From Octopus bimaculoides (taxonomy: Eukaryota): a stretch of DNA of 64,000 nt. Shown one piece after another: positions 10,677 through 56,728 of the stretch (positions are counted from its first letter, which is position 1; the number at the start of each line of letters is the position of its first letter). Both the position numbers and the translations under genes were made by a program. Below the pieces are notes generated by a model. It had not been told where the DNA came from. It saw only the letters and a list, made by a program, of their open reading frames with translations, and did no database searches. The stretch is from assembly GCF_001194135.2 (NCBI RefSeq), contig NC_068989.1, forward strand, positions 130,576 through 194,575, written 5' to 3'.

Positions 10677-10754
10677 GGCTTCAATAAAGAAGCTGATTAT
10701 ATGGATTACTTGAACAGTGGAAATGAGTCCTTACTTGAGGTTTCTGGAAAACCA
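10677..10754 (+). CDS. SPTBN5: betaH-spectrin exon 7
   Basis: gacag|...|gtatgt; GFNKEADYMDYLNSGNESLLEVSGKP; 78 nt, phase 0->0. Confidence 0.88.
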
Positions 10755-11129
10755 GTATGTATAAATGTCTTAAAGTACTCTTTTTGTCTAAAAATATGCT
10801 CTACTTTTCAGCTTTGGCTTATTATGGTTTTCTTTCTTATGTTTTAAAAATAGGCTTGTGAAAACTTAAACAATAGAACTCCAGACAAAATACTTTTCTA
10901 CACCCAACATAGTTCTTTATTGTTCTTAGTCCAAACAAACTTGTCCCAGTCAGCTTTATCTCTTTACTGGTAATATTGATAGTATTAGCAATAGTCTTCT
11001 TTTCTTAAGCCTTGAGCTTCTGGTAGAGTCATAGGGGTGTCAGCATGACACAGCATGCCTTGAGTATGTTTAAACCTAACAGAGCCCTTTCCTCTCCAAG
11101 TATTGATCACAGCTCAATTTATTTGAACA

Positions 11130-11310
11130 AGACAGACAGAGAGATTGAAAATAATTCACCCAGTGCTGGTGTGCTGTGTAATAAACCCTAAAGGGAAGAA
11201 AGGGAAAAGTTGACTTCAGCAGGATTTAAAATCAGAGCACAGAAGTCTAGATTGAATACTGCAAGTCAGTCATTCTGTCCAACACTTTAATAACTTGGGC
11301 GCTTCACCAC
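11130..11310 (-). mobile_element. tRNA-derived SINE (family B), degenerate
   Basis: aaagttgacttcagcaggatttaaaatcagagc...attctgtccaacac similar to the other family B copies. Confidence 0.5.
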
Positions 11311-11475
11311 CATTTACCAGTTTTGCAGCAGTGAATGCAATTCAATCACTTTTTTTTGCCTTCTCTGACATGTTTCAAGAGAAATGTTTTGTTTGACATA
11401 ATTTCTATCATTCTGTGGATAGGCCATTATTTCGTTGATCTCACACGATTTCAGTTGTTATTTTTTTTTTTGTAG

Positions 11476-11615
11476 GACTCTTTGGATGATGTGGTGTGTC
11501 AAATTCGTCAAAATGAACTTTTCTGTAGCAAAATGAAGGCTGGTGATGAAAGGGTTAATGCTTTTAAACAAAAGGCAGATACATTATTGAATGAAAAACA
11601 TCCAGACTCAGAACA
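11476..11615 (+). CDS. SPTBN5: betaH-spectrin exon 8
   Basis: tgtag|...|gtaagt; DSLDDVVCQIRQNELFCSKMKAGDERVNAFKQKADTLLNEKHPDSE(H); 140 nt, phase 0->2. Confidence 0.93.
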
Positions 11616-11879
11616 GTAAGTAATACCTACAAATATCTGTTGTTTTAACTCCAAATCAGCTGTAATCAAGCAAACCTATAATCAAAAGTATCCCAGCCAT
11701 GCCCATCCTACTTATTTTGTTTTCAGACAATGCGTCTAGGACTATATTATTTAATGCGTCCTATATTTTAAAGAGAGTAAATTGTTACTTGAGGGTAATT
11801 TGGTTGTCATGATTGACCAGATTGTGATACTAGAACTGTCATTTGAAGATTTTATGTTGATTTCTACAATTATACAAAA

Positions 11880-12250
11880 TCTAGTTTTTGTAATCTTGTT
11901 GTTTTTGTTTTGTTTTGTTTTTTCTTATGGTTTGGTCTCGAAGGAGAGTCGGTGCCTGTGGCCTTCCCAGTCCTTAGAAGACTGGGAAGACCGGTGTCAT
12001 TGCTATTCTTCTTGAATTGTAAGTTGACAGTTGTAGGAAAAACATGTGCAGAGATAGAATTCCTGAAGCGTGATGTTTCTGATGATGAACCAAGACTGAG
12101 CAGAGTGCTTCGTGTGGAGGCCTGAGTAGTTGGATACAACATGAGATCAACAGGCACCGTGGAACAGATGCTAGTATAGTGTCTCTCTCTGCCATACGTT
12201 ACAGTGGAATGGAGAATGGGAAACAATTCCATGCCAATCAGTCAAATGGC
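11880..12250 (-). mobile_element. LINE 3' end (CR1/L2/jockey-like) with A-rich tail
   Basis: Minus ORF SRFRNSISAHVFPTTVNL resembles the C-terminal FRNSFFPxTV motif; it is followed by a 3' stem-loop and an (AAAAC)n-like tail. Confidence 0.5.
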
Positions 12251-13096
12251 CTTTCTTTGAATAGTTTACATTCTGTGTGTGTGTATAAGGTCAGCACTGT
12301 TTAGATGCAAGAGCAAATCTGTTCTGGAGAATTCACTTGAGTTTTGAAGAGGGTTAATAATTGTTGCCTGTGAGACAATGCAGCTGTGATATAAGAATAA
12401 TAACAACCAATGAAACATTTAGAGAGAGAATTTATAATAGTAAATGGAGGATTCAAGGGTCTGACATAGGACTGGCAGTGATGGAGAGCACTGGTGGATC
12501 TGGTCAGCTGTGTGCATGATGACATCTCTAGGACCACTAAGTTGGGATGACCCCCAGCTCCATTAAGCAAGAGCATGAAGCAAGTAAACAAGGAAGGTTT
12601 TTGAATAGTTGTCCAATGTACAGGTGAAGTTTCACTTGATAAATCTTCAATAAAGGCAGGATAATCAGTATCCTCTTAATGCTTGGGCACACTGGCAGTT
12701 GTCTAGGGGGACCAACAGTAATACTGTGTATACTGTAGCTTGCTGTCAATAAATGCTTTATTTGGAAGTCTGTTATACGGTTAAGTTGACCCTTATAATT
12801 AATGAAACAAACATACTTTCTAAAGCTGGAAATTGAAGCTATGTTAATGTTATTAATGTTTAATTTAAATGAAGTGGGTGGCTGGCTGCAAAGAAATTAA
12901 GAACAAAGATGGTTTGATAAATATGGAATTCTGAACTTTTTTTTTTTTTAATGGTTACTAACTTTATTTTGTTTTAACACATACTTTTGAAAATAATTTA
13001 CATATTTACAAAAGATCAAATAAAATCAAACCTGAAAAGATTCTGAAATTCTTATAAAAAGATTGTGTATGCATTTGTTCATGTATTGACTTAATA

Positions 13097-13290
13097 TCAT
13101 CATTATTTAACATCCACTTTCTATGCTGGCATGGGTTGGACGGTTTGACTGAAAACTGGTAAGCTGAGGAGCTGCATCAGGTTCCAATCTGATTTGGCAC
13201 GGTTTCTATGGCTGAACGTCCAATGCCAACCGCTCCAAGAGTGTAGGGGTGCTTTTTACATGCCACTGGCAATGGCTATGACTACAATCC
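13097..13290 (-). mobile_element. RTE 3' UTR copy
   Basis: catcattatttaacatccactttctatgctggcatgggttggacgg... Confidence 0.8.
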
Positions 13291-13394
13291 CAGCATTAGA
13301 CATAAAAAAGAAAGTTTAAAATAAAGATGATGTGTTTTTTTTCTCAAAATTCCACATAAGTTTACATGTTTACTATCATCTAATTTTTTTTTAG

Positions 13395-13518
13395 TATTGG
13401 TAAACGTAAGAACCAAATTCTGCAGCATCGAGCTGCAGTGAAAGAAAAGGCTTTACAACGGGCAGACGACTTAGAAAAGGCTAGGAAATTTCTTGAATTC
13501 AAGCGTAATGCTAATGAA
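13395..13518 (+). CDS. SPTBN5: betaH-spectrin exon 9
   Basis: tttag|...|gtaagt; IGKRKNQILQHRAAVKEKALQRADDLEKARKFLEFKRNANE; 124 nt, phase 2->0. Confidence 0.93.
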
Positions 13519-13794
13519 GTAAGTAGCTTCTCTAAAGATCATCTTTGGTAATTTTTTCATATTGCAGATTAATTCAGTTATGTATTTTTATTTTCTTAGC
13601 CCACAAAAGAGAATATTTACCTGTAACCTGTGAAACCATTTGATATTAGAAGGTGGAGCCAAATGAGTGGAGGTGTTGAATATTTAAGGTTTCAAAACAG
13701 AGTGGGGAGCTTTCAAATGGTTTTATGTGATTTAAAGTAACCCATCTTTCCTCAACAGAAGTCTGCAACCAAGATTCCAGTTTCAAAGCATTTT

Positions 13795-13833
<39 letters not shown>

Positions 13834-14022
13834 TGGCATCTGTTTGACTAGATCAATACAGTGATTGTCAGAAATGAATGAAACTGCAGGAAAGACGTAA
13901 TAACAAGGCTGCATCAAAGCATCAATGAAAATCTTAAATGGTAGCCTAATGTAATGTAGGAACAGCACTATTTCTATTTTCAGATGAATCTATTCTGATG
14001 TTTTTTTTCTAATTTCTTTCAG

Positions 14023-14166
14023 CTGTCTGAATGGATCAAAAACAAAAACCAATCAGTTAAAGACTCCTCTAAAGATGCCACTAATGTATCAGCTGCCTTG
14101 TTGAAACACCAAGCTTTTGAAGCTGAGCTAAAGGCTAACAGTGAATGGCTTCAGTCTTTGAATAAG
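14023..14166 (+). CDS. SPTBN5: betaH-spectrin exon 10
   Basis: ttcag|...|gtattt; LSEWIKNK...LLKHQAFEAELKANSEWLQSLNK; 144 nt, phase 0->0. Confidence 0.93.
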
Positions 14167-14439
14167 GTATTTTGGAGTTTTGTAGGATTTTATTTGTTTT
14201 GTTTTTTGATGATGTTGTCAATCATAGTCTGAAAGAACACCATTTTGCAATTTTGTTTCTAAAGTACTTCTGCATCAATCCTGTCCAAAGTGATGGCTAT
14301 TTTGGTCAAATTCTTTGGGTCTTTATAATAGTTACAAAACTGACTGTTTCTTTTTTTTTTTTTTTTTTTTTTTTTTTTGTTTTGGTTTTACATTTTAAAT
14401 TTGACTAATCTGCATTTTCTCCCATTACCTTACCTGAAA

Positions 14440-16322
14440 TAAAAAGATGTTCTGGAAAGAGGTGCAGAGGGTAAGAAAGGTGGTTGAAGGAAGGGAAGAA
14501 AGGGTGAAGGATGTAAATGGAAGCAAGGATGTACAAAGGAGATGGGCAGTGTATTTTAGTGAGCTGTTAAATGTGGAGAATGTTAGGGAGGCAAGTATAG
14601 TGGCTGTTAAAGGAGAGAGGAGAATGCCTGTTGTTGGGAATGGCAGTACGGTGCAATTGGAAGAGAGGTAAGGGAATCCTTGCAGAAGATGGCAAACCGG
14701 AAGGCACCAGATACAGATGGGTATACAGTGGAATGCTTAAAGAAAGAAAGGGGTGACAGTGATTGAATGGTTACTGAGGCTTATGAATGCTTGTTATATG
14801 GCTGGAAGAGTACCAAAGGACTGGTGCAGTGCCTGTATAGTGCCACTGTACAAGGGGAAAGGGGATAAATGTACGTGTAGAAATTTTAAGGGTAGAAGTC
14901 TTCTGTGTGGTTGGTAAACTATATGGGAGAATTCTGATTGTAAGGGGGAGGAGCAGTGTGGTTTTAGGAGTGGAAACGGGGTGTGCAGATCAAATATTTA
15001 TAATAAGGCAGATGTGTGAGAAGTTTTTGGCAAAAGGGAGGGAGGTGTATTGGGCCTTTATGGATTTAGAGAAGGCATATGACCTTGTGGACAAGAATGC
15101 AATGTGGCAGGTATTGCAGTTGTATGGAGTAGATGGTAGATTGTTGAAAGCTGCTCAGAGTTTTTATAGAGATATTTTGGTGGTGAAGTGAGTGGTTTGA
15201 TGTGAAGGTGGGGTTAAGACAGGGTTGTGTTATGTCTCCATGGCTGTTTAATTTATATATGGATGGTGTGGTGAGAGAGGTAAATGCTAGAACCTTTGGT
15301 AGGGGAACCCAAATGGTGGAAGAAAATGGAGAAAAATGGCAGGTGAGTCAGTTGTTGTTGTTTGCTGATGATACAGCACTGGTGGTGGATTCGGAAGAGC
15401 AACTGAGGAGACTGGTGGTAGAGTTTGGAAGAGTGTGTGAGAGGAGGAAACTGAAAGAGAATGTAGCTAAGAGTAAAGTGATGTTTGAGAGATGGAATGG
15501 CTGGTAGGATGGATGTGAGTATAAATGGTGAGATGTTAGAGGAGGTGAGCGTTTTTAAGGATCTGGGATCACATGTGACGACAGATGGGGATGGGGTTGG
15601 CTGAGGAAGTGGGATATAGAGTGAGGGGGGGAGTAAAATATTTGGAGTTGTGAAAGTTATGCTGAGATATAAAAGGTTGAGTATGGAAATAAAAAGAGGT
15701 GTGATTGAGCTGACAATGTTATATGGTGCAGAGATGTGGGGGCTGAGAGAGGCAGAAAGGAGGTGACTACGTGTGTTTGAGATGAGATGACTGAGGGCTA
15801 TGGTTGGTTTGACACGGATGGACAGAATGAGGAGGTGTGAAGGCAAGCAGGAATGAGAGAAAAACTAACAACCAAAATGGATAGATGAATATTGAGGTGG
15901 TTTGGTGGACATGGAAAGGATGGTAAGGAGGGTGATGAAGGCAGCAGAACCAGAGGCAGACCTCAGTTTGTGTGGATGGATGGAGTGAGGGAAGCTTTGG
16001 TGGTTAGAGGTGTTGGAGTGAGAAAGGCAAGAGAGTTTCTAAATGATTGGAAAGCTTGGAGAGTGTTTGTGGATGGATGAGTGAATCTGGATGTTGCTCA
16101 AAGGAATACAGCACCAGCATGATGCGGCAGGGGTAAACCAACATATGCTGTCAGGCCGCGCTGCTGATATTAGGGGTTGCATTCTATGCCTTGACCCGAG
16201 CATAGAATGGAGCTCACCTCTTTGAGATGGGAAATGAATGGAATGTCTGCTGTGTGTCTTGTTGTGGCTACTCCCTCCTAAAAAAAATGGGGAATAGGCC
16301 TGGGTAGATATGAAAAAAAAAT
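14440..16322 (+). mobile_element. 5'-truncated RTE LINE (second family), RT through 3' UTR
   Basis: Frameshifted ORF pieces FMDLEKAYD, GLRQGCVMSPWLFNLYMD, LLFADDTALV, RWFGH, RGRP; A-rich end near 16314. Confidence 0.9.
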
Positions 16323-16489
16323 ACCTTGCTCCAATAGGAAGAAAAGATTAAATACTATGTTTCTGTTTTAGTTTACTTGAAGTAATATAAAGAGAGACTA
16401 TATGTGATGAGTTTTATTTTCCTGTAGTAGAAAATAAGAGAAATCTATATTTTAAAGTACAAATAGAAAGATATATTTTTTTTTTTCCA

Positions 16490-16620
16490 ATGTGCAAGAG
16501 CAGCCATATATAGGATAAAATCCTAGAAGAAACTTGCTCTGGCTGCCACACAATGGACTGAACCCAAAACCATTTGGTTGAAAACTGAACTTCATAACCA
16601 CACAGCTATATTTGTGCCAC
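16490..16620 (-). mobile_element. tRNA-derived SINE (family A), degenerate
   Basis: ggactgaacccaaaaccatttggttg...aaccacacagc = reverse of the family A head. Confidence 0.55.
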
Positions 16621-16798
16621 ACACACAATATTCATTTCATGCTAAATGTCATATCTATTTGAATAAATTTTCAAGTGTGTGTGTGTGTGTGTGTGTAGAG
16701 TAAAAACTTACTGATCAAATGATTTTTGTTCATTTTACATTAATAAAACTGATGTTTATGATTTTGTTTTAATGTTTATATCATTTATTCTTTGGTAG

Positions 16799-16972
16799 GA
16801 TGGAAAGGCTATGCTTGATTCTGGTCATGAAAACTCTAAAGAGGTGCAAGAAATTCTCAGTCAAGTGAATAAACAGTGGGAAGAATTATATAAAAATTCT
16901 GTAAATCAGTCCAGTACTTTAAACCATGCTTCACAGATAGGAAATCTCAATAAGAGTGTTGATGATTCCATT
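16799..16972 (+). CDS. SPTBN5: betaH-spectrin exon 11
   Basis: ggtag|...|gtaagt; DGKAMLDSGHENSKEV...KQWEEL...NKSVDDSI; 174 nt, phase 0->0. Confidence 0.93.
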
Positions 16973-17409: not shown

Positions 17410-17499
17410 GTAAGTATAACAGAACTTGGTAACAAAGTCAGATGTGAAGATGTTGGGTCTGATCTTCGGAATTGTAAAGATCTTCTAAAGAAACACCAG
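17410..17499 (+). CDS. SPTBN5: betaH-spectrin exon 12
   Basis: attag|GTAAGT...|gtttgt; VSITELGNKVRCEDVGSDLRNCKDLLKKHQ; 90 nt, phase 0->0. Confidence 0.9.
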
Positions 17500-19300: not shown

Positions 19301-19431
19301 AACCTTGAAAATGAGAAAGCATCAATTGGAGAGAATTTGAAAGTTATAACTTGCCAAAGTCAAGAATTAGCTAAAGCTGATCCCAAAAACAAAGCTAACA
19401 TTATTCAGAGTGTAAATGAAGCTAATATTGA
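19301..19431 (+). CDS. SPTBN5: betaH-spectrin exon 13
   Basis: ctcag|...|gtaaga; NLENEKASIGENLKVITCQSQELAKADPKNKANIIQSVNEANI(E); 131 nt, phase 0->2. Confidence 0.92.
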
Positions 19432-19994: not shown

Positions 19995-20181
19995 ATTTGA
20001 AAAACTGACACCTAAGTTTAATTCCCGTAAGCAAACTTTGAATCAAGCTTATGGTTGGCACCAAATGAATTTTGATGTTGATAATGAACTTCTATGGATC
20101 AAAGAAAAGCTACATAGTGTCTCTTCTACTAATTATGGTAAAACCCTGTTGGAGGCTCAGAATTTGCACACAAAACATCAG
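19995..20181 (+). CDS. SPTBN5: betaH-spectrin exon 14
   Basis: ttcag|...|gtatga; FEKLTPK...FDVDNELLWIKEK...YGKTLLEAQNLHTKHQ; 187 nt, phase 2->0. Confidence 0.94.
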
Positions 20182-21209: not shown

Positions 21210-21410
21210 AAATTGGGTGTTGAAATTCAAGGTCATCAACCCTTGATAGACAAAGTTTTATCTACTGGAGCAAAACTCATTCAGGAACAACACTTTGCTT
21301 CTAAGTCTATAAAAGACAAATGCCAGGACCTGCAACTCTCTTGGGATGACCTACTTCGTAAATATAAGATCAGAAAGAAGAATCTAGATTTGTCTTTACA
21401 AACTCAGAAG
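21210..21410 (+). CDS. SPTBN5: betaH-spectrin exon 15
   Basis: tttag|...|gtataa; KLGVEIQGHQPLIDKV...SWDDLL...LSLQTQK; 201 nt, phase 0->0. Confidence 0.94.
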
Positions 21411-22722: not shown

Positions 22723-23638
22723 TCAATATTGGGAAATGTCTTTGAGGTCTCTGCTCTTGGTAATGATACAGGTTTGACATAAAGTGTCTTGATGGCATGT
22801 GGATGATGCTTGTGTATGGAAAGTTACGGTGGAATGGAGAGTCATTTCATCTCCACCAAAGGGAGCATTAATAGAAATGTTAACAAACCTGGGGTGGGAG
22901 TGCTTATCTCTCAATCAGAGATATATGATGGTGATAACACTAATTATTGTAGAAATTTTTAGATGACAAACATTTCATTTCATTTCGATTTCAGTAGCAT
23001 CAGCCTTAGCAGGGTGTGAAAGCTAAAAACAGTTGTAGTATTGAAGTAAATGAGGACAATAATTTAAGTTCAAATCCTACCAAATTTTAGTTAAAATTCT
23101 GATCTGGTTGATAAACTAAGTATCAATTATAAACTCATGTAGTTGATTATATTCTCTCCATCAACCTCTTTCAGCAGCTGAACTTAGATTTGAATAGATA
23201 TTCATTTCATTGCCATCGTTAATCAAAGTAGATTCATTTATTTCTGCTCATTATATATTTCAGTGTTTGTTTCCACATCATTTACTGATCATGGAATCAA
23301 TATGATATTAGAAATATAATCCTGACACCACAGCTCTACGTTCTCTCATTCTTTTATTTATTTATTTATTTTAGCATATATTTTACTTCCTTAAAATTAC
23401 TGATAGATTTCTATGGACATATTATGTGTTCATTGTATTTTTGAACCCATTGATTAAACAAGCAAATTATGCAACATATTAGCCAGTTATTGGAATTATT
23501 TTGGACCTTTTTTTAAGGTTCAAATGCTAATCAAATCTTACATGTACCAGTTTGTGTCGGAAAAAATTCTTTTTCCAGTTAAATTTATTTCATTTTGTTA
23601 ATCACGATAAAAATGGACTTCAAAATTTGTTTTCAAAG

Positions 23639-23869
23639 TATTTATCAGAAGTAGCAGAAGTAACTAGCTGGATTAACTACCAAATGGAGATTTTATCAAG
23701 CACGGATTATGGTAAAGATGAAAATGCTGCTGACAGGCTGTTGGCAAAGAATAAGGTGTTAGAGACTGACCGACAGACCTATCAAGGTGTGGCTAATGCA
23801 CTTGGCAAAGAAGCTACCAGACTCATTAAAAGTGGCAGTGATAATCCTTCAATGATTCGTAAAACACAG
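23639..23869 (+). CDS. SPTBN5: betaH-spectrin exon 16
   Basis: tcaaag|...|gttaga; YLSEVAEVTSWIN...STDYGKDENAADRLL...MIRKTQ; 231 nt, phase 0->0. Confidence 0.92.
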
Positions 23870-24337: not shown

Positions 24338-24520
24338 GATGGTCTGTATGATATGTTGAATAAACTGAAACAGCTCTCAGCTGAGCGCCGTGTTAAACTG
24401 GAAGAGTCGAAAAATATTCATGCGTTCCGAAGAGAACATGCAGACTGTGAAGAATGGATTGCAGAACAGATGCAGATAGCTTCTTTGGAGGAATATGGAG
24501 AAGATTATGAACACTTCGAA
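24338..24520 (+). CDS. SPTBN5: betaH-spectrin exon 17
   Basis: tttag|...|gtaaga; DGLYDMLNKL...EEWIAEQ...YGEDYEHFE; 183 nt, phase 0->0. Confidence 0.94.
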
Positions 24521-34540: not shown

Positions 34541-34699
34541 ATTGAAAACTGGATGGATGATAAGCTGAAAGTTGCTGTTGATGATGATGTTGTTAAAGAT
34601 ACTACTGATCTTAATGTGAAACTGAAGAAACTGCAGAAACACCAAGCATTTGTTTCAGAAATATATGCCAACACTGATAGGATAGAAAAGACAAAGCAG
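34541..34699 (+). CDS. SPTBN5: betaH-spectrin exon 27
   Basis: tatag|...|gtctgt; IENWMDDKLK...KLQKHQAFVSEIYANTDRIEKTKQ; 159 nt, phase 0->0. Confidence 0.93.
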
Positions 34700-39425: not shown

Positions 39426-39540
39426 TTGGCGGCAACTGCAAGGGGCTTTGCAGAAATACCGATCTGAACTGGAGAATCACTCTGAAATCCATGCATTTAA
39501 TAGAGACGTCAATGATGTAACAGAACGAATAAAAGAAAAG
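39426..39540 (+). CDS. SPTBN5: betaH-spectrin exon 31
   Basis: tccag|...|gtaaat; WRQLQGAL...EIHAFNRDVNDVTERIKEK; 115 nt, phase 2->0. Confidence 0.95.
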
Positions 39541-39720: not shown

Positions 39721-40041
39721 CATCATCATCATCATCATCATCGTTTAACGTCCGCTTTCCATGCTAGCATGGGTTGGACGATTTGACTGAGGACTGGTGA
39801 AACCGGATGGCAACACCAGGCTCCAGTCTGATTTGGCAGAGTTTCTACAGCTGGATGCCCTTCCTAACGCCAACCACTCAGAGAGTGTAGTGGGTGCTTT
39901 TACGTGTCACCCGCACGAAAACGGCCACGCTCGAAATGGTGTCTTTTATGTGCCACCCGCACAAGCCAGTCCAGGGGCACTGGCAACGATCTCGCTCGAA
40001 AATCCTACAGGAGCCAGTCAGGCGGTACTGGCAACGGCCAC
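39721..40041 (-). mobile_element. Young RTE 3' UTR copy
   Basis: (CAT)n tail plus UTR; ends at a 10-N gap. Confidence 0.9.
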
Positions 40042-40051
40042 NNNNNNNNNN
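40042..40051. other. Assembly gap (10 N)
   Basis: N run between two near-identical repeats. Confidence 1.
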
Positions 40052-40592
40052 TCATCATCATCATCATCGTTTAACGTCCGCTTTCCATGCTAGCATGGGT
40101 TGGACGATTTGACTGAGGACTGGTGAAACCGGATGGCAACACCAGGCTCCAGTCTGATTTGGCAGAGTTTCTACAGCTGGATGCCCTTCCTAACGCCAAC
40201 CACTCAGAGAGTGTAGTGGGTGCTTTTACGTGTCACCCGCACGAAAACGGCCACGCTCGAAATGGTGTCTTTTATGTGCCACCCGCACAAGCCAGTCCAG
40301 GGGCACTGGCAACGATCTTACTTGGCTTGCCGGGTCTTCTCACGCACAGCCCATTTCCAAAGGTCTCGGTCCGTAGTCATCGCCTCGGTGAGGCCCAATG
40401 TACGAAGGTCTTGCCTCACCACCTCAGCCCAGGTCTTCCTGGGCCTACCTCTTCCACGGGTTCCCTCAACTGTTAGGGTGTGGCACTTTTTCACGCAGCT
40501 ATCCTCCTCCATTCTCACCACATGTCCATACCAGCGCAATCGTCTCTCTTGCACGCCACAACTGATGCTTCTAATGTTCAGCTTTTCTCAAG
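40052..40592 (-). mobile_element. Young RTE LINE 3' end
   Basis: Intact ORF end MQERRLRWYGHVVRMEEDSCVKKC...GRGRPRKTWAEVVRQDL (40318-40554) plus UTR and (CAT)n. Confidence 0.92.
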
Positions 40593-40965: not shown

Positions 40966-41079
40966 GAAGTTCAGTTGTCTACTGATGATTATGGGAAAAA
41001 CTTAGCAGCTGTTCAACTATTGTTACGTAAGCAAGAAAAGATTGATATGGATTTCACTGTACTAGAAGCTGATATTAAG
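40966..41079 (+). CDS. SPTBN5: betaH-spectrin exon 32
   Basis: ttcag|...|gtttgt; EVQLSTDDYGKNLAAVQLLLRKQEKIDMDFTVLEADIK; 114 nt, phase 0->0. Confidence 0.92.
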
Positions 41080-43502: not shown

Positions 43503-43604
43503 GTGAACTGGTCCAGTAATATGGCTAAACAAATCAACACATCTGAACTTGCCAAAGATTCCCTTGAAGCTGAGAATATGTTGCAGTTGCATCATGAACG
43601 AAAA
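43503..43604 (+). CDS. SPTBN5: betaH-spectrin exon 35
   Basis: tttag|...|gttagt; VNWSSNMAKQINTSELAKDSLEAENMLQLHHERK; 102 nt, phase 0->0. Confidence 0.92.
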
Positions 43605-46084: not shown

Positions 46085-46162
46085 ATATACAAGGAGACTG
46101 TGGAACAGGTTGATGGATGGCTTGCTGCTAAGGAAGCCATTCTCAGTAACAAAGATGTTGGG
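46085..46162 (+). CDS. SPTBN5: betaH-spectrin exon 37
   Basis: ttcag|...|gtaaat; IYKETVEQVDGWLAAKEAILSNKDVG; 78 nt, phase 0->0. Confidence 0.94.
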
Positions 46163-46384: not shown

Positions 46385-46478
46385 NNNNNNNNNNNNNNNN
46401 NNNNNNNNNNNNNNNNNNNNNNNNNNNNNNNNNNNNNNNNNNNNNNNNNNNNNNNNNNNNNNNNNNNNNNNNNNNNNN

Positions 46479-47039: not shown

Positions 47040-47303
47040 GATTCTCTATATTCTGTTGAAGAACTGCTGAAAAAGCACAAAGCCTTTGAAAAGACTCTGC
47101 ATTCTCAACAAGACAAAATAGAAGACTTGAAACAATTCTCTGACAACCTTTGCAATGAGCAGCACTATGCAAGTGCTGAAATAAAGGGTTTGAACCAAGC
47201 TGTTTGTGAAAGGCACCAGAAACTTTGGACTACTTCTCAGGCACGCCACAAGACTTTAGATGATGCCCGCAAATATCAGCTGTTCTTGCGTAATCTTTAT
47301 GAA
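47040..47303 (+). CDS. SPTBN5: betaH-spectrin exon 38
   Basis: ttcag|...|gtatgt; DSLYSVEELLKKHKAFEK...LFLRNLYE; 264 nt, phase 0->0. Confidence 0.95.
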
Positions 47304-48124: not shown

Positions 48125-48271
48125 GTTACTAATTGGATTCAAGAGAAACTGAAAATTGCCAGTGAAGAGAACTACAAGGATCCCACCAATTTACAAGCTA
48201 AGATCCAGAAACACACTGCATTTGAGGCAGAGTTAACAGCAAATCGTAATCGTGTTGATGATGTCGTACAG
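48125..48271 (+). CDS. SPTBN5: betaH-spectrin exon 39
   Basis: ttcag|...|gttagt; VTNWIQEKLKIASEENYKDPTNLQAKIQKHTAFEAELTANRNRVDDVVQ; 147 nt, phase 0->0. Confidence 0.95.
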
Positions 48272-48556: not shown

Positions 48557-48582
48557 GTATTGATTATTTCTACAAATTTAGA

Positions 48583-49356: not shown

Positions 49357-49494
49357 GAAGGAAGTAAATTGGTACAGGCTAATCATTATGCTAAAGACGA
49401 AATTGAAATTAGCTTAAAGGAATTGGAATGTTGCTGGAAAGAGCTGTTTTCAACAAGCAATAGAAAATATCAGTATCTAAAGGAAGCTTTTGAA
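49357..49494 (+). CDS. SPTBN5: betaH-spectrin exon 40
   Basis: tctag|...|gtaagt; EGSKLVQANHYAK...CWKEL...KEAFE; 138 nt, phase 0->0. Confidence 0.94.
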
Positions 49495-50226: not shown

Positions 50227-50352
50227 GCTCTAACAATAAATCGTGACTTGGATGATCTCAATCAGTGGCTGGATGAAACGGAGAGTCAACTGACCTCTGA
50301 AGACCATGGCAAAGATTTAGTCACTGTCACCATGCTTATTAAAAAAAATCAG
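50227..50352 (+). CDS. SPTBN5: betaH-spectrin exon 41
   Basis: aacag|...|gtattg; ALTINRDLDDLNQWLDETE...HGKDLVTVTMLIKKNQ; 126 nt, phase 0->0. Confidence 0.95.
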
Positions 50353-50932
50353 GTATTGATTGTCATCATCAGTTTTATCTCTGTTATAGAATGTTCATAT
50401 TATTATATGTAATAAAACTATTTATGTTCATAGAGGGCTTAAGGCACAGGTTTTTTTCTAGTTATTTCAGTTTATGAATTGCGAATAGCTTGAGGTGAAC
50501 TTAGTAATTTATTGCAGCTAGACAAAAAATTTTTTAACATGACGAATGTAAACTTCATTGATGAAGAAATATTTCTTCAAGACAATTGGTTAGTTTTGTA
50601 AAAGTTTTAATGAATTGATCACATGTTAGTAATTGTTATCTGGATTGCTAATGCATAAACAATAATTAATTAATTAATTAAATATGTAGTCAAATCATGT
50701 AATTACTTTCATTTCTCATACTTGTGAAATGCACTTTAGAACAGATTTAAAAATTGATTTTCTTTTTTATTGAATGCAAATCTATTTCCTACCCATCACA
50801 TTTGTCTTCTTTTTGTACAATCCACTGAAATCCTCTACCGTATGTTCTGGTGTTATCCCAGAATATTGAGAGATAAAGGATTGATACATTATTTACATTT
50901 GACTGATATTTGTCCTCATTTTGTTTGTTGTT

Positions 50933-50978
50933 AACACAACGTTTCGGCTGATATATCCTCCAGCCTTCTTCAGGTGTC
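50933..50978 (-). ncRNA. Minimal type I hammerhead ribozyme motif (intact)
   Basis: Minus strand GACAC-CUGAAGA-A-GGCUG-GAGGAUAUAU-CAGCC-GAA-AC-GU-U^GUGUU: stem I GACAC/GUGUU, stem II GGCUG/CAGCC, palindromic stem III ACGU. Confidence 0.72.
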
Positions 50979-51255
50979 TTGGGGAAATTTCAAACCTGGA
51001 TTCTCATTCCTAAGGTATTTTTCAATGTTATTATTATTGTTATTATTATTATTAGTGTTCAGGTCACTGCTTGGAATCAAACTCGGAATCTTGGGGTTAG
51101 TAGCTCGCGCTCTTAACCCCTACGCCATATGCCCATGGGCTACTAACCCCAAGATTCCAAATTCGATTCCAAGCAGTGACCTGAACACTAATAATAATAA
51201 TAATAATATCAAAAAATACCTTAGGAATGAGAACCCAGGTTTGAAATTTCTCCAA

Positions 51256-51298
51256 GACACCTGATGAAGGCTGGAGGGTATATCAGCCGAAATGTGTT
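51256..51298 (+). ncRNA. Hammerhead motif with stem III deletion (probably inactive)
   Basis: GACAC-CUGAUGA-A-GGCUG...CAGCC-GAAA-[CGU missing]-UGUGUU. Confidence 0.55.
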
Positions 51299-51799
51299 AA
51301 CAACAAACAAGATGAGGACAAATGTAAATAATGTACAGAATTCCTCATCTCTTAAATATAGAACTGTAAAGGATTGATATTTAGGATAGTCAGAAACTAC
51401 TTACGCTTTTTTTTTTTTCTTTTCTCTTTTTTTTTTATTACTATCTTGAAACCATTTATTATTATCTGTTCTCAACTAACTTGTTATAAAGACTACTCGG
51501 TGATAGAGCTGGTCCAAATGCTTGACAGGACTGTGCTGGGTAACTCACTGTTTTAAGATTTATTCATTTCAGGATCATATTAGCCTGATATGTTTAGTAG
51601 TTAATAATACTAATAAAATACTAAATTAATTATATCACTTCTTTTGCAATATTTATCTTGTGGACAATTAACTATTTTAATTATTAAGGTAATAGAAATT
51701 TAAAAGGAACATTTATTGTAATTAGCATTTCTATTTCTATTAAGATTTTGATAATCATCATAATAGGTATATATTCACTTCTTGCCAATTGTATTTCAG

Positions 51800-51930
51800 C
51801 GTCTGAAGCAAGATTTTGAGAACTATAGGAAGAAAACGAACAACCTTTATGAGTCCACAAAATCTTTGAAAGAGGAAAATCATTTCATGGGCAAAGAGTT
51901 ATTGAAAAGAACACAAGAAACTATTGATAG
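51800..51930 (+). CDS. SPTBN5: betaH-spectrin exon 42
   Basis: ttcag|...|gtaaaa; RLKQDFENYRK...NHFMGKEL...TQETID(R); 131 nt, phase 0->2. Confidence 0.94.
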
Positions 51931-51951
51931 GTAAAATATAGCTGCTATTTT

Positions 51952-51987
<36 letters not shown>
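51952..51987. repeat. (GTA)n microsatellite
   Basis: Direct reading. Confidence 0.95.
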
Positions 51988-52064
51988 AACATGTCGTCTA
52001 TACTTGTAATTGTGTTCATTCCTCAATATTTGCTGTAAATTCATGTTTATATTTTGCTAGCATA

Positions 52065-52934
52065 CAAGGTGGTATCAAAAGGTTTCTGGACTAGTTTAAG
52101 TTTAATAAAAAATAACTTATTTACCTCAGTTTTAAACTCATCTCCTTTGAAACAATCACCTTGCACAGCAATACACTGGTCCCAGAGTTCCTGCCACTTT
52201 TGGAATCTGGCCTGGAGCTTGTTCTCCTTAAGCAAGTCGAGGACCTTATATGATTTGCTCTGGATCTCAACAGCGATGTTAAAATGGTGACCTTTGAGCT
52301 GCATTTTCATCTTGGGGAAGAGATGGAAGTCTGCAGGGGCTAAATCTGGCCAATAAGTTGGGAATGGAAATGATACCATGTTTTGGGTGAGAGACTGGAG
52401 TGAGGAGAGCTTGGTGAAGAATCCAGTTCTTCATGCTCCACAGCGCCAGTCATATTTGCTGAATGTCCTCCCTCAAATGCTTCAAAACAACACAGTAGAA
52501 CTCTCAATTGATGGTTTGCACCTGGCAGGTGAATTCTTGATGCAAAATACATTTCCAGGTGTGATGCTTACAACAGGTCTTCCAGATCACTCATCATCTT
52601 CCAGGGACGTTTTTCTATTTTTGAAGCACTCATGCCACTCAAAACTTTGTGTTTGACCCTCTGCCTTATTGCCATAGCATGCTCAATGTCTCTGTAGCTC
52701 ACTTCCCAAGTTTAATACAAAATTTCACATTGGCTTTTTTGTTCCTGTCCATGACAAAATCGATGACAACAGCCTACATGTGATCAAAAAACACAGATTT
52801 TGCAACATGTAAAGTAAACCCAAGAATGTCACTTGGCACACTGCTTCATAAAGGACGCTGCTAGCTCTCACTTTGCACGTAACTATATACTGCCATCTGC
52901 TGGTGTGCTACAAAGCTATTCCGGGACCACCTCA
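52065..52934 (-). mobile_element. Internally deleted mariner element
   Basis: Minus ORF TYWPDLAPADFHLFPKMK; ends caaggtggt / accacctca, each flanked by TA. Confidence 0.85.
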
Positions 52935-53251
52935 TATAAGTGTCACATCTATGGAATTAGTTCTTCCTGAGTATTTTCAGATATTTCAGTTTATCCAATC
53001 TTCTGTTGTATTCCTTCTGGATTTGAAATCATCGTTATTTAATGTTTGTTGCCCATGCTGGCATGGGTTGGACTAATGTTTACAGCACCTAGGTTTCCCA
53101 ACCACACTCCCATTTAAGTACTAAGCTCAACATTGCTTAACATCAGTGATTGGAAAAGAACTGGTGCTTTCACTGTGATATGGTCATAAACTATAAAAGG
53201 TTAAAATATTTGATCTTTTCTAATTTCTATTTTTTTTTTCCTTCCTTTCAG

Positions 53252-53438
53252 GTTTGAATCATTATCAGAACCATTCAATATTAGAGAAGAAAACTTAAAT
53301 GATTCTCTTCAATTATACCGTTTCTATCGGGATCTAGAAGATGAACTGACTTGGATTAATGAGAAACAGCCAATTGTGGAATCAAAAGATTTTGGTAAAT
53401 CTCTCCCTGAAGTGCAGAACCTTTTGAAGAAATTCCAG
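53252..53438 (+). CDS. SPTBN5: betaH-spectrin exon 43
   Basis: ttcag|...|gtatgg; FESLSEP...RFYRDLEDELTWINEK...LLKKFQ; 187 nt, phase 2->0. Confidence 0.95.
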
Positions 53439-54417
53439 GTATGGATTATTCTGTGTTAGAATAATCTAATATCTTGATAAGGCTCTGAATAATTTTTGTT
53501 TGGGATTTTATCTAATAGATGAGAACATGAAATTAGAGAGATACAAACAAGGAAATAAGGAATCAACTAAATTTGTGTATAATTGTTGAATCCTAAGTCA
53601 GCTCTGATTTAGTAAATCTTTAATCAAAGACGTTTCAGTTATGACCATCCAATCTTTTTCCTAAGCATAACATGTATGAGCCACCATTATCTAATGTGTT
53701 CTTGTTTTTACAACATTAAAGTATGACTTGAGGAGATTTGGGTGTTATTTCTAGCATATCAAGTGACCATATAGGTATGCCTCATCATTAAGTTTGTATA
53801 TGATTTTCAAGTGTGGACTAATTAGACCTGTATTTTGAAGAAGCACTTAATTGGCAGATTTTAAAAGCTAAATGTTAATAAAAGCTGGGAAATACTTAAA
53901 TAGTCTGGTTTTGATAGTTTAATTTGGACCCATCCAAGATTTAAAATTTTTCATTTACTTAGCACTAGAGAAACTGGAACCCAGGGTTAAATAATATGTA
54001 TGCTGGAGAGTCATGAAAGAATTAAGTAAATAACTTTCAAGACTTACTAGAGACCATAGTCAGAACTTTGTTTTCTGTAAAGTTAGGTGGCTGTGAGAGA
54101 GATCTTCACACAATTGGTAGGTTAATGCAGCTGAGGTAATTATACTCAGTAAGCTTCCTGCTTGTTCTTTAGCTTGGTAAATTGAGACAAATAAAACTGG
54201 GTGTCTCACTGAGATGAAATGAAGAACTTGCTGCAGATAATATTTTGTAATTCATGAGCTGGGAATTAAACCTCATTTACTAAGCTTCTGTCTGGAAATT
54301 TAGATTCTGTTTTAAGATTGTATTTAGTAAAACAAAGTGTATCTTGTTATATCTTTATTGGATGCTGAAATGAAAATTCTTTGAAGTTAAAACACTAATA
54401 AACCCTGTATTTTGTAG

Positions 54418-54618
54418 GCTGTTGAGTTTGAAATTATTGGCCATGAACCTTCCATTGAAGCTGTTGCAACAACTGCTCGCAATATGTTGAAAAGTAACCA
54501 TTTTGAAGCAGCTGATATTCAAGCTCGGATTGATAATCTTCACATCAAACTTCAGCGACTTAAAGAATGCGCTTCTGTACGAAAAATAAAACTTCAGAAT
54601 TCTTTGGAAGCACAGAAA
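54418..54618 (+). CDS. SPTBN5: betaH-spectrin exon 44
   Basis: tgtag|...|gtaggt; AVEFEIIGHEPSIE...SVRKIKLQNSLEAQK; 201 nt, phase 0->0. Confidence 0.95.
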
Positions 54619-55579
54619 GTAGGTTTTTTTTTTGTTTTTTGTTACTTTTAATATTAACCTTTGAAGAACGGTTCAAATTTTGCTCCCAAGAAACCTAGTA
54701 TTTGCTTAAAGTTGGGTATGTTTGGTCGTATGAAAACCTCCATGTCATACACAAGTCTTGTTTTCATCTCATTACTTTTTTTAATGATAACATTGATACT
54801 GTTTATTACTGTTATATATATGAGTCAGTGTGTTGGCGTATGAGGGATGTGAGTACTTTCATGTCAATCACCCATGTTGCTTGTCTTGAGGCACTCCAGA
54901 GTGTGAGTGTGTGTGTGTGTGTGTAGTAGTAGTAGTAGAAATATCTTCCTAGATGTAGGGACAGCACTTTATTGTGAAGAGAAAGCCAGTGTTTGAATTG
55001 AATCCTTTGCTATGTTGAGTATGTGTGTTTCTTAGATTTTTACCATTAATATGGATCTCTTCTAACATTTGTGGCAACCTTGAAGGTTCTAATTGTGTGC
55101 TTGGATGGGTTCAGTACGATAATGTTTTTTTTTTTTGTTTTTGTCATCTGTAGACTGTTTAAAGAAATTTTCACAGCTCTATTGAAGAATGTTTTTGAGA
55201 TCTCTGTTCATGGAGTTAGTGTAGATTTGATATGAATTATCTAGATTGCATGTGACAATGATTGTGTAGGGAAGATTAATGAAAGGTGATATCATGTGTG
55301 TAGGGGCTGGTTTTATTGAAGTAGATCGTTGAGAGTGTAGGGAGACAAACCACAGCCTAATGACTGAAACAAGTAAAAGAAAAGATTTATCAGTTTTCTC
55401 TACAAGGTATTGGTCAGGCCAAGACTTTAGTAGAACACTAGAACACTATGTTAGATGCTAAGCCATAAGACTGAATCTGAGACCACCTGATTCTGCAGCA
55501 AATTTAACTGCACAGGACAGTAATTTTTGTTAAGGTAATTTAAACTGAATTTATCATTCTCTTGTGTTCTGTAATACAG

Positions 55580-55675
55580 TTTTATGCTGAAGTGGATGAA
55601 GCTGAAGCCTGGATGAAAGAGAAATTACCACTTTTGACAACTTCTGATCTTGGTGTTGATGAAGATTCTGTACAG
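55580..55675 (+). CDS. SPTBN5: betaH-spectrin exon 45
   Basis: tacag|...|gtatct; FYAEVDEAEAWMKEKLPLLTTSDLGVDEDSVQ; 96 nt, phase 0->0. Confidence 0.95.
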
Positions 55676-55949
55676 GTATCTATGCTTATGTGTCATTTAA
55701 TTTATCACAAATGTTGCTTTTAATTAATCACTGGAAAAACTGAACTAATTTATCTGAAATTATAGTAACTTATGACAGTGTGAGTCTGTTATTGAATGCG
55801 TGTGTGTTTAGATAGGTCTCCAGCCTATCCAGAAAAGAGGTAATAACTCCAGCTAAGAACTGACTTAGACTGTGATGACTTACCCAAACCATATCAGCAT
55901 GGAAATCACCAAGTGATTTTAATTGTAATTTTTAATTGTTATATTTTAG

Positions 55950-56084
55950 ATCCTGATGAAGAAATTAGATGCTCTTGAGAGAGATATTGAAAATTTCAGT
56001 AATAACATTGGTGAATTAGCTGCTGTTCGACACAGTCTTGTAGACAGAGGACATTATGATGCAGAAAACATTCAGAGGTACCAG
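55950..56084 (+). CDS. SPTBN5: betaH-spectrin exon 46
   Basis: tttag|...|gtaaga; ILMKKLDALERDIENF...GHYDAENIQRYQ; 135 nt, phase 0->0. Confidence 0.95.
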
Positions 56085-56345
56085 GTAAGAAAGTGTTGTA
56101 TTCTTCATATTATCAATGATTTTTTTTCTATTAAGCAAGCTAGAATAATACAAAAAAGAAAGATCTGACATTCAATGAATGTGCAAGTTATGTGATGCCA
56201 TTGTAAATATTAAGGGTTCTGATTGAGCAAACGTATTCTAACAGTGACTGTCTTATTCTGTTATTTCAGGTTTCATATATTTAATATGCGATAGATATCA
56301 TACATTTAATACTACATCATCAATGTAGCCAAGATGTCATTTTTA

Positions 56346-56378
56346 TAACCCTAACCCTAACCTTAACCCTAACCCTAA
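56346..56378. repeat. Short interstitial (TTAGGG)n-like tract
   Basis: taaccctaaccctaaccttaaccctaaccctaa. Confidence 0.8.
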
Positions 56379-56545
56379 CATCAACTCTGAATTCCAATCC
56401 CATCTCAAAATATTTCAGGAGCAAAATGTCTTAATTGCTTAAGGAATGAAACCTTGTCTTAGAATTGGACAAATTATGCTTTGTTAAAATAGTTTAGAAA
56501 TATCTATTATATTGAAGAAAAATGTTTTTTTTTTTATCTTTCAAG

Positions 56546-56728
56546 GAAAAAATAGAAACCATGTATAGCAACCTGCAGGATTTGTTGACTCAAAGACGTA
56601 TCAAACTAACAGAAGGCAAGCAATTTTTTGAATTTCTTAAAGATGTTGAAGAAGCTTCCAGCCGAATCCGTGAAAAGGCTGCCATTGCCACCAGTGAAGA
56701 TTGTGGTCAAGATTTGGAACATGTTGAA
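56546..56728 (+). CDS. SPTBN5: betaH-spectrin exon 47
   Basis: tcaag|...|gtgaga; EKIETMYSNL...ATSEDCGQDLEHVE; 183 nt, phase 0->0. Confidence 0.93.

What the first reader, a model, noticed from the sequence alone, without database searches (positions are those of the whole stretch)
10677..56728. Exon-intron architecture duplicated 13 repeats apart: fossil of an ancient intragenic duplication
Seen: exons 7-17 measure 78, 140+124, 144, 174+90, 131, 187, 201, 231, 183 nt. Exons 37-47 measure 78, 264, 147, 138+126, 131, 187, 201, 96+135, 183 nt. Ten boundaries fall at homologous codons with the same phase, including the phase-2 one (NIE|FEK vs IDR|FES). Examples: KP|DSLDDV vs VG|DSLYSV; NANE|LSEW vs NLYE|VTNW; TQK|YLSE vs AQK|FYAE; YEHFE| vs LEHVE|. 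The exon 5 and exon 35 starts also match. The proteins are only distantly similar. Established: spectrin repeat arrays grew by multi-repeat block duplication with an eight-repeat periodicity. Inference: these introns predate the duplication that built betaH-spectrin, and the four unshared introns mark later gains or losses. I am not aware of this being shown at the intron level for betaH-spectrin.
Basis: partly seen in the sequence, partly recalled or inferred. Interest (0 to 1): 0.72.

Follow-up and report, generated by a model that had tools for sequence, protein, structure and literature searches.

The report
Duplicated exon pattern in βH-spectrin gene
Two stretches of an octopus giant-spectrin (βH/SPTBN5) gene, 13 protein repeats apart, are cut by introns at the same codons; this is a real, very old trace of an internal duplication, also seen in a sea slug, a hippopotamus and the ordinary β-spectrin gene, and it is interesting to specialists rather than surprising.

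Summary
The window holds repeats 7-30 of the Octopus bimaculoides βH-spectrin gene on the + strand. I placed introns on a 106-column repeat model. Register +13 repeats gives 11 identical position-and-phase matches out of 18 comparable introns. Every other register gives 0-4. Permutation gives P≤0.0013 under the harshest null. Both flagged N gaps lie inside introns, in repetitive DNA, and do not touch the exons.

The +13 peak recurs in a sea slug βH gene (11 matches) and in hippopotamus SPTBN5 (7 matches). Of the 47 octopus introns, 31 sit at identical positions in hippo. A fish conventional β-spectrin gene matches both βH copies, with 7 introns at register 0 and 6-8 at +13. So these introns predate the β/βH split.

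Protein profiles show the array [a-h][a-e][a-h][a-d]. Intron patterns pair unit 1 with unit 3 and unit 2 with unit 4, which fits a 13-repeat tandem duplication.

I could not find it published at intron level. It is a new example of a classic phenomenon, of moderate interest.

The parts
7962..8089 (+). Exon 5 (128 nt). Its start is the intron at repeat 8, column 9, phase 0, and it matches the start of exon 35.
10677..10754 (+). Block A exon 7 (78 nt), start of repeat 9. Boundaries 0/0 and 26/0 are both shared with block B.
11476..11615 (+). Block A exon 8 (140 nt). It ends at the unshared intron R9 72/2, which is also present in sea slug and hippo.
13395..13518 (+). Block A exon 9 (124 nt). 140+124 = 264, the length of block B exon 38. 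It ends at R10 8/0 (shared).
14023..14166 (+). Block A exon 10 (144 nt), between R10 8/0 and 58/0. The same exon exists in R18, R23 and conventional β R10.
16799..16972 (+). Block A exon 11 (174 nt). It ends at the unshared intron R11 10/0.
17410..17499 (+). Block A exon 12 (90 nt). It ends at R11 40/0 (shared).
19301..19431 (+). Block A exon 13 (131 nt). It ends at the shared phase-2 intron R11 83/2.
19995..20181 (+). Block A exon 14 (187 nt). It ends at R12 40/0 (shared).
21210..21410 (+). Block A exon 15 (201 nt). It ends at R13 1/0 (shared).
23639..23869 (+). Block A exon 16 (231 nt). The acceptor at 23639 was confirmed against the RefSeq and Argonauta proteins. It ends at R13 78/0 (shared).
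24338..24520 (+). Block A exon 17 (183 nt). It ends at R14 33/0 (shared, and also present in conventional β R14).
34541..34699 (+). Exon 27 (159 nt), between R18 8/0 and 58/0. It is the third copy of the 'e'-family exon and a trace of the older eight/five-repeat duplication.
40042..40051 (.). Assembly gap (10 N) inside intron 31. It is flanked by identical 267-nt direct repeats and has no effect on exons.
43503..43604 (+). Exon 35 (102 nt). Its start is the intron at R21 9/0, and it matches the start of exon 5.
46085..46162 (+). Block B exon 37 (78 nt), start of repeat 22.
46385..46478 (.). Assembly gap (94 N) inside intron 37, within a (TC)n microsatellite. It has no effect on exons.
47040..47303 (+). 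Block B exon 38 (264 nt).
48125..48271 (+). Block B exon 39 (147 nt), between R23 8/0 and 58/0.
49357..49494 (+). Block B exon 40 (138 nt). It ends at the unshared intron R23 104/0, which is also in hippo.
50227..50352 (+). Block B exon 41 (126 nt). 138+126 = 264 = 174+90 in block A.
51800..51930 (+). Block B exon 42 (131 nt). It ends at the phase-2 intron R24 83/2.
53252..53438 (+). Block B exon 43 (187 nt).
54418..54618 (+). Block B exon 44 (201 nt).
55580..55675 (+). Block B exon 45 (96 nt). It ends at the unshared intron R26 33/0.
55950..56084 (+). Block B exon 46 (135 nt). 96+135 = 231, the length of block A exon 16.
56546..56728 (+). Block B exon 47 (183 nt). It ends at R27 33/0.

Best explanation
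The window carries repeats 7-30 of the Octopus bimaculoides βH-spectrin (karst/SPTBN5) gene. Its repeat array has the family order [1-5][a b c d e f g h][a b c d e][a b c d e f g h][a b c d]. That stretch is roughly repeats 6-18, copied to 19-30. The copying most simply happened by unequal crossing-over in a β-spectrin-like ancestor that already had introns at these codons. Both copies, and the single-copy homologous repeats of conventional β-spectrin, have kept many of those introns at the same codon and phase ever since. The coding sequence meanwhile diverged to about 28% identity. This is an evolutionary record, not a functional element.

Shown: the shared positions, their statistical excess, their recurrence in other phyla, and their presence in β-spectrin.

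Inferred: that the separating event was a single 13-repeat tandem duplication, and that it happened before the animal-choanoflagellate split.
For: A gene model built without the paralogy, identical to RefSeq, gives equal exon lengths in the two blocks. Offset 13 gives 11 of 18 matches against 0-4 elsewhere, and the permutations are significant. The direct alignment has one 1-codon gap and introns in the same columns. Profile similarity is enriched at offsets 8, 13 and 21 and yields the family order. The +13 peak is replicated in Plakobranchus (11 matches, next best offset 6; pooled re-deal P(any)=4e-5) and in hippo SPTBN5 (7 matches, next best 4; P13=8e-5). Of 47 octopus introns, 31 are at identical positions in hippo and 42 in the sea slug. 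Conventional β introns match βH at register 0 (7 matches) and +13 (6-8 matches). Intron sets pair unit 1 with unit 3 (R6/R19, R8/R21, R9/R22) and unit 2 with unit 4 (R14/R27, R16/R29), as a [unit1+unit2] tandem copy predicts. There is no DNA-level similarity between the blocks except a 42-nt conserved motif, so the resemblance is not recent. The choanoflagellate Salpingoeca urceolata has a 30-repeat protein with the same family order.
Against: Some +13 pairs share no intron: R7/R20, R15/R28, R17/R30. For families a-d the protein profiles do not single out the +13 partner; for example R9 is closest to R17, R15 to R20 and R7 to R28. A clean R6-R18 copy predicts a 31st 'e' repeat, and none exists. 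α-spectrin repeats score higher with block B than block A does, so deeper shared ancestry is possible. Only one conventional β gene (a fish) was examined, and no α-spectrin or non-bilaterian gene structure could be examined. The splice junctions rest on gene models and cross-species conservation, not on RNA reads I could inspect.
Confidence: 0.85

Rival explanations
1. The 13-repeat register is not one duplication. The array descends from an older, strictly eight-periodic array, as in α-spectrin. Blocks A and B are units 1 and 3 of that array, and three repeats (f-h) were later deleted from unit 2. The shared introns would still be ancestral, but they would date to the eight-repeat unit and not to 'the duplication that built βH'.
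For: Offset 8 is also enriched at protein level. R10, R18 and R23 all share 8/0 and 58/0. R4 40/0 and R5 1/0 in hippo match the g and h families. R9, R22 and R30 share 0/0 and 26/0. α-spectrin is strictly eight-periodic and resembles block B.
Against: Intron sets group unit 1 with unit 3 and unit 2 with unit 4, not all units equally: R6/R19 against R14/R27, and R8/R21 against R16/R29. Conventional β shows the same two types in its two units. This is what a copy of [unit1+unit2] predicts.
Confidence: 0.12
2. Introns were gained independently at the same sites in the two blocks, because homologous sequence offers the same proto-splice sites.
For: Positions 40/0 and 83/2 recur in several non-homologous registers, which hints at favoured sites.
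Against: Eleven coincidences fall in one register against 0-4 in the others. Most of them are unique positions: 0/0, 26/0, 8/0, 58/0, 1/0, 78/0, 33/0, 9/0. They are shared across molluscs and a mammal, and also with single-copy β-spectrin.
Confidence: 0.02
3. The coincidence comes from repeat periodicity alone, with introns preferring certain positions of the 106-residue unit.
For: There is some positional recurrence, and phase 1 is absent altogether.
Against: The offset scan and both permutation nulls preserve exactly this preference and still reject it. The exon lengths 131, 187 and 201 are not multiples of the repeat length.
Confidence: 0.005
4. The pattern is an artefact of hand-picked exon boundaries, or of recent gene conversion or an assembly duplication.
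For: The window has four N gaps, and one of them is flanked by an exact duplicate.
Against: The model built without the paralogy, the RefSeq protein, and the sea slug and hippo genes all give the same boundaries. The blocks are 27.6% identical in protein and show no DNA similarity.
Confidence: 0.005

Closest known systems
Nested intragenic duplications of spectrin repeats inferred from protein sequences (Thomas et al. 1997, Mol Biol Evol 14:1285, cited as ref. 15 in PMC13545430; the paper was not readable here, and its content is from my own knowledge of the abstract)
   Same: It concerns the same gene family and reaches the same conclusion, that repeat arrays grew by multi-repeat, non-uniform block duplications. 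My profile analysis reproduces this pattern.
   Different: That work used Drosophila protein sequence. The fly gene has few introns, so it offers no intron evidence. Here the evidence is the position and phase of introns in intron-rich genes, plus the conventional β gene as an outgroup.
Eight-repeat periodicity of α-spectrin (established knowledge, reproduced here)
   Same: α repeats i and i+8 are the closest pairs, with profile scores of 198-261. The same a-h families recur in β and βH.
   Different: The βH register is 13 (8+5), not 8. The intron structure of α could not be examined, because the only α locus obtained (L003) has no introns.
Classic 'intron fossils' of internal gene duplication, such as the three-domain serum albumin/α-fetoprotein genes with repeated exon sets of equal phase (established knowledge)
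   Same: Equal exon lengths and phases recur at a fixed protein offset, while the sequence has diverged.
   Different: Here the copied unit is 13 structural repeats (about 1380 residues). Intron positions are not periodic with the 106-residue repeat. The pattern is older than Bilateria.
Exon-intron organisation of the human erythroid α- and β-spectrin genes (Kotula 1991; Amin 1993; from my own knowledge, not held in the library)
   Same: Exon boundaries do not follow the 106-residue repeat. The fish β gene mapped here shows the same large 871- and 757-nt exons.
   Different: As far as I know, those papers did not compare β with βH or look at the +13 register.

Membership tests
βH-spectrin (karst / SMA-1 / SPTBN5) | About 30 spectrin repeats, against 17 in conventional β | tested here: met
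   The Argonauta orthologue has 30 repeat-model hits, and twelve aligned orthologues are collinear in 30 repeats. The window itself encodes repeats 7-30, less about 2.4 repeats lost in an assembly gap.
βH-spectrin (karst / SMA-1 / SPTBN5) | N-terminal CH-domain actin-binding region, SH3 domain inside repeat 5, C-terminal PH domain | tested here: met
   The precomputed Pfam domains of the same-species protein cluster and of the orthologues include CH, SH3, Spectrin and PH. These parts lie outside the window.
βH-spectrin (karst / SMA-1 / SPTBN5) | Closer to named βH/SPTBN5 orthologues than to conventional β or α | tested here: met
   The ranking puts the 3700-4000-aa βH proteins first. α and conventional β cover only about half of the query at 25-30% identity.
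Intragenic block duplication recorded by intron positions | Collinear protein similarity at one fixed offset | tested here: met
   Offset 13 has z=8.7 in the profile comparison. The direct alignment has one gap in 562 columns.
Intragenic block duplication recorded by intron positions | Intron position and phase coincide at that offset far more than at other offsets | tested here: met
   11 of 18 against 0-4; permutations; replicated.
Intragenic block duplication recorded by intron positions | The shared introns are ancestral: present in distant orthologues and in a single-copy outgroup gene | tested here: met
   Hippo and sea slug; fish conventional β. Non-bilaterian genes were not obtainable.
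Intragenic block duplication recorded by intron positions | The +13 partners are exclusive sister repeats in a phylogeny | tested here: inconclusive
   This holds for repeats 8 and 10-14. It does not hold for repeats 6, 7, 9, 15 and 17, where other family members score as high or higher.
Recent segmental duplication or gene conversion | Nucleotide-level similarity of exons and introns between the copies | tested here: not met
   Only a 42-nt motif at 69-74% identity links exons of R10, R18 and R23. All other repeats in the region are intronic dispersed elements or microsatellites.

The most novel reading that the evidence does not exclude
The intron map of βH- and β-spectrin genes is a readable record of the whole nested history of the repeat array: an eight-repeat unit, then a 13-repeat block. 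It would date to before the animal-choanoflagellate split. At least seven named introns (R6 83/2, R10 8/0 and 58/0, R11 40/0, R12 40/0, R14 33/0, R16 73/0) would then be older than the β/βH divergence. Intron characters could then settle how α, β and βH arose from one ancestor, which protein trees have not resolved.
Probability: 0.45. Interest if true: 0.55.

Novelty: new member of a known kind. Interest (0 to 1): 0.4.

Why it matters
It gives character-based evidence, largely independent of sequence divergence, for how the giant 30-repeat spectrin was built, where protein similarity is only about 28% and partly ambiguous. It shows that dozens of introns in this gene have stayed at the same codon since before protostomes and deuterostomes split. 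Several of them predate the β/βH split. It also offers a practical marker set (position and phase per repeat) for annotating spectrin genes and checking repeat numbering in new genomes. For example, it exposes four exons missing from the current octopus model. It does not reveal a new mechanism or function.

Tried and rejected
1. A protein search with a single 88-aa exon found nothing. The full draft protein was needed.

2. The first exon-chaining pass, with strict splice thresholds, missed 13 exons. The retrained pass inserted a spurious 25-nt exon with a 221-nt partner in place of the 231-nt exon. I rejected that solution because the AG at 23637-23638 gives a phase-0 join that matches RefSeq and Argonauta.

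3. Genomic loci for other orthologues were mostly unobtainable.
   - Argonauta (111 kb) and Limulus (177 kb) exceed the length limit.
   - Tubulanus, Pomacea, Geodia, Lampetra, Mactra and Patella α-spectrin are not on record.

5. I asked whether βH repeats 18-30 are specifically orthologous to α repeats 1-13, as an 'unsplit ancestor' reading would predict. α repeats i and i+8 behave identically towards βH, so there is no 1:1 collinear signal.

6. Seven literature searches found no intron-level analysis of spectrin block duplication. Thomas et al. 1997 is not held.

Full report
WHAT THE WINDOW IS

The window is AT-rich eukaryotic DNA (about 35% G+C) with four N gaps. Stop-free stretches rich in E, K, L and Q lie all along the + strand. 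I built a gene model from the sequence alone. I trained a codon log-odds table on clear open stretches, scored splice sites with position weight matrices, and chained candidate exons by dynamic programming with phase compatibility. No use was made of similarity between parts of the gene.

The retrained pass gave 51 exons. After one correction (below) the model has 50 exons and 2282 residues with no stop codon. Pfam finds 22 Spectrin stretches in it.

A database search with the model gave these hits:
- a 100%-identical protein (P0001);
- an Argonauta hians orthologue at 81% identity (3989 aa);
- a long list of 3700-4000-aa βH-spectrin/karst/SPTBN5 proteins from molluscs, a nemertean, arthropods, nematodes, lamprey and mammals.

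The cluster of P0001 contains XP_052826268.1 of Octopus bimaculoides. My model is an exact substring of that RefSeq protein.

CHECKING THE OBSERVATION

The chainer recovered 78, 140, 124, 144, 174, 90, 131, 187, 201 and 183 nt for exons 7-15 and 17. It recovered 78, 264, 147, 138, 126, 131, 187, 201, 96, 135 and 183 nt for exons 37-47, at the coordinates listed under 'parts'.

The only disagreement was exon 16. The chainer preferred a 25-nt exon plus a 221-nt exon. It yields ...TQK|YLSEVAEV..., exactly as in the RefSeq and Argonauta proteins.

THE FLAGGED GAPS

Gap 40042-40051 lies in the intron between exons 39426-39540 and 40966-41079. It is flanked by two 100%-identical 267-nt copies (39726-39992 and 40052-40318) of a dispersed intronic repeat. 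This looks like two contig ends that overlapped and were joined with Ns.

Gap 46385-46478 lies in the intron between the 78-nt and 264-nt exons of block B. It sits in the middle of a (TC)n microsatellite.

The octopus RefSeq protein and the Argonauta protein run through both junctions with no missing or extra residue. The sea slug and hippo genes have the same 78|264 (78|173+91) arrangement. No exon is hidden there, and the frame is not in question.

PUTTING INTRONS ON A COMMON COORDINATE

I built a 106-column repeat model from the octopus and Argonauta repeats, without any intron information. I then assigned every intron a repeat number, a column and a phase.

Argonauta has 30 repeats. The window starts at repeat 7. 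Block A is repeats 9-14 and block B is repeats 22-27, so the offset is exactly 13 repeats.

Shared positions at offset 13 are:
- R8/R21 9/0
- R9/R22 0/0 and 26/0
- R10/R23 8/0 and 58/0
- R11/R24 40/0 and 83/2
- R12/R25 40/0
- R13/R26 1/0 and 78/0
- R14/R27 33/0

Unshared positions are R9 72/2, R11 10/0, R23 104/0 and R26 33/0.

A direct global alignment of the two blocks does not depend on the repeat model. It has 27.6% identity and one single-codon gap in 562 columns (z=33 against shuffled sequence). The introns fall in the same columns.

IS IT MORE THAN CHANCE OR PERIODICITY?

I counted matches at every offset from 1 to 20 repeats. Offset 13 has 11 of 18 comparable introns. All other offsets have 0-4 of up to 46.

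Null 1 shuffles which repeat carries which set of positions, so any preference for certain columns is kept. The result is P(offset 13 reaches 11)=0 in 200000 trials and P(any offset reaches 11)=0.0013. The second figure is inflated, because the paired sets themselves are being shuffled.

Null 2 pools all position/phase pairs and re-deals them. The result is P(any offset)=1e-5.

PROTEIN-LEVEL STRUCTURE OF THE ARRAY

I used twelve full-length orthologues aligned 1:1 over 30 repeats and compared per-repeat profiles. After removing each repeat's general consensus-likeness, offsets 8, 13 and 21 stand out (z=5.6, 8.7, 4.4) and no other offset does.

The families are:
- a {6, 14, 19, 27}
- b {7, 15, 20, 28}
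- c {8, 16, 21, 29}
- d {9, 17, 22, 30}
- e {10, 18, 23}
- f {11, 24}
- g {12, 25}
- h {13, 26}

Repeats 3, 4 and 5 lean towards f, g and h. The array therefore reads [1-5][a-h][a-e][a-h][a-d].

For repeats 8 and 10-14 the +13 partner is the best hit. For repeats 6, 7, 9, 15 and 17 other family members score as high or higher.

OTHER SPECIES

I wrote an exact protein-to-genome splice mapper and validated it on the window, where it reproduces all 50 exons.

Hippopotamus SPTBN5 (locus L001) has 66 coding exons. The sea slug Plakobranchus ocellatus (L004) has a partial βH model of 58 exons.

Exon lengths already show the pattern:
- Sea slug block A: 78, 140, 124, 147, 174, 221, 187, 201.
- Sea slug block B: 78, 264, 147, 155+109, 131, 187, 201, 96, 135, 183.
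- Hippo block B: 78, 173+91, 147, 138, 257, 187.

On the common coordinate, 42 of 47 octopus introns are at identical positions in the sea slug and 31 of 47 in hippo.

The +13 peak is there in both. The sea slug has 11 matches (next best offset 6; pooled re-deal P13=0 in 50000, P(any)=4e-5). Hippo has 7 matches (next best 4; P13=8e-5, P(any)=0.029).

With repeats 6 and 28-30 now visible, further +13 pairs appear: R6/R19 (16/0, 83/2) and R16/R29 (73/0). R7/R20, R15/R28 and R17/R30 share nothing.

Two of the four 'unshared' octopus introns (R9 72/2 and R23 104/0) are also in hippo, so that asymmetry predates Bilateria. The other two are at least shared with the sea slug.

CONVENTIONAL β-SPECTRIN AS AN OUTGROUP

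I mapped the 36-exon gene of a catfish β-spectrin (L002). Its repeats correspond to βH as follows:
- β1-7 to βH1-7
- β8-13 about equally to βH8-13 and βH21-26
- β14-16 to βH14-16
- β17 to βH30

Its introns match βH introns in two registers only. Register 0 gives 7 matches. Register +13 gives 6-8, depending on the βH species. There is a minor peak at +8 (3-4).

β R10 8/0 and 58/0, R11 40/0, R12 40/0, R14 33/0, R16 73/0 and R6 83/2 are present in the single β copy and in both βH copies. These introns therefore existed before β and βH diverged, and before the two βH copies diverged.

WHICH DUPLICATION?

Intron sets group unit 1 with unit 3:
- R6 and R19: 16/0, about 40-44/0, 83/2
- R8 and R21: 9/0
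- R9 and R22: 0/0, 26/0

They group unit 2 with unit 4:
- R14 and R27: 33/0
- R16 and R29: 73/0

β shows the unit-1 type in β6 and the unit-2 type in β14-16. This is what a tandem copy of [unit 1 + unit 2], that is 13 repeats, predicts. I take that as the most likely event.

Several points count against it. No 31st 'e' repeat exists. The b family shows no shared intron. The e family (R10, R18, R23, β10) and possibly the g, h and d families (hippo R4 40/0, R5 1/0; R30 0/0 and 26/0) also carry traces of the older eight-repeat duplication.

α-spectrin is strictly eight-periodic ([e][a-h][a-h]...) and scores slightly better with block B than with block A. But α repeats i and i+8 behave identically towards βH. 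This argues against a specific collinear orthology of α1-13 with βH18-30, and for α simply being slow-evolving. I could not obtain an α gene with introns.

AGE

The choanoflagellate Salpingoeca urceolata encodes a 3712-aa protein that aligns over 30 repeats with the same family order. Only 8 of 27 repeats hit their exact animal counterpart best. So the 30-repeat architecture probably predates animals. This is an inference from family order only.

NOVELTY

Block duplication of spectrin repeats is established at protein level: Thomas et al. 1997, cited in PMC13545430, and the eight-repeat periodicity. Seven full-text searches found no paper using intron positions for βH or for β versus βH. The key older papers are not in the library, so I cannot exclude that a gene-structure paper noted it.

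The phenomenon itself, introns as fossils of internal duplication, is classical. I rate this a new, well-supported example of a known kind, and of moderate interest.

Noticed in passing
window 56729-59307 (N gap 57980-58079): Argonauta has 252 residues between ...DLEHVE and IQQKIDTL... (rest of repeat 27, repeat 28 and most of repeat 29). In sea slug and hippo these are four exons of about 192, 156, 218 and 190 nt. They are absent from the window: tblastn finds only 31-39% paralogous hits. RefSeq XP_052826268.1 skips them in frame, and the older UniParc model stops at 56728. The exons are probably hidden in the 100-N gap.
   Followed up: yes
window 39726-40318: The 10-N gap is flanked by two 100%-identical 267-nt copies of a dispersed repeat. 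This looks like an unresolved contig overlap rather than missing sequence.
   Followed up: partly
window 53077-53191 (- strand): A full-length 5S rRNA match (Rfam RF00001, 60.5 bits, E=3e-10) lies inside an intron. It directly adjoins a copy of the dispersed repeat family seen at 13088, 22105, 28207, 31566, 38895, 39726, 40052 and 47418. It may be a 5S-derived SINE or a 5S pseudogene.
   Followed up: no
window 14447-16080 (+ strand), intron between exons 10 and 11: A string of ORFs includes one (15202-15507) that matches Pfam RVT_1 (E=2.7e-15). This is a degraded retrotransposon in sense orientation inside the intron.
   Followed up: partly
window introns of repeats 7-27; L001; L004: None of the introns inside repeats 6-30 is phase 1 in octopus (38 phase 0, 9 phase 2), sea slug (42 and 13) or hippo (35 and 13). 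Phase-1 introns do occur outside the repeat region and in the fish β gene.
   Followed up: partly
window 14103-14144, 34636-34677, 48208-48249: The only exon-to-exon nucleotide similarity in the region is a 42-nt stretch (69-74% identity) encoding the KHxAFEAEL motif of repeats 10, 18 and 23, the three 'e'-family repeats that also share introns 8/0 and 58/0.
   Followed up: partly
window 4260-4275: The older UniParc model of this gene (P0001) has five extra residues (FFSIC) at the start of exon 3, which implies an acceptor 15 nt upstream of 4275. The current RefSeq, Argonauta and my model use 4275.
   Followed up: no
protein P0041 (Salpingoeca urceolata): A choanoflagellate transcriptome encodes a CH-SH3-30-repeat-PH protein with the same a-h/a-e/a-h/a-d family order as animal βH-spectrin.
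   Followed up: partly
locus L003 (ENA metagenome scaffold, 64.5 kb): A 1384-aa α-spectrin N-terminal half (51% identical to limpet α-spectrin) is encoded as one uninterrupted ORF. It comes from an unidentified eukaryote with an intron-poor spectrin gene.
   Followed up: no
proteins P0039 and other α-spectrins: α-spectrin repeats i and i+8 (2/10, 3/11, 4/12, 5/13, 6/14, 7/15, 8/16) are by far each other's best matches (profile scores 198-261). This is much tighter than any βH paralogue pair.
   Followed up: partly
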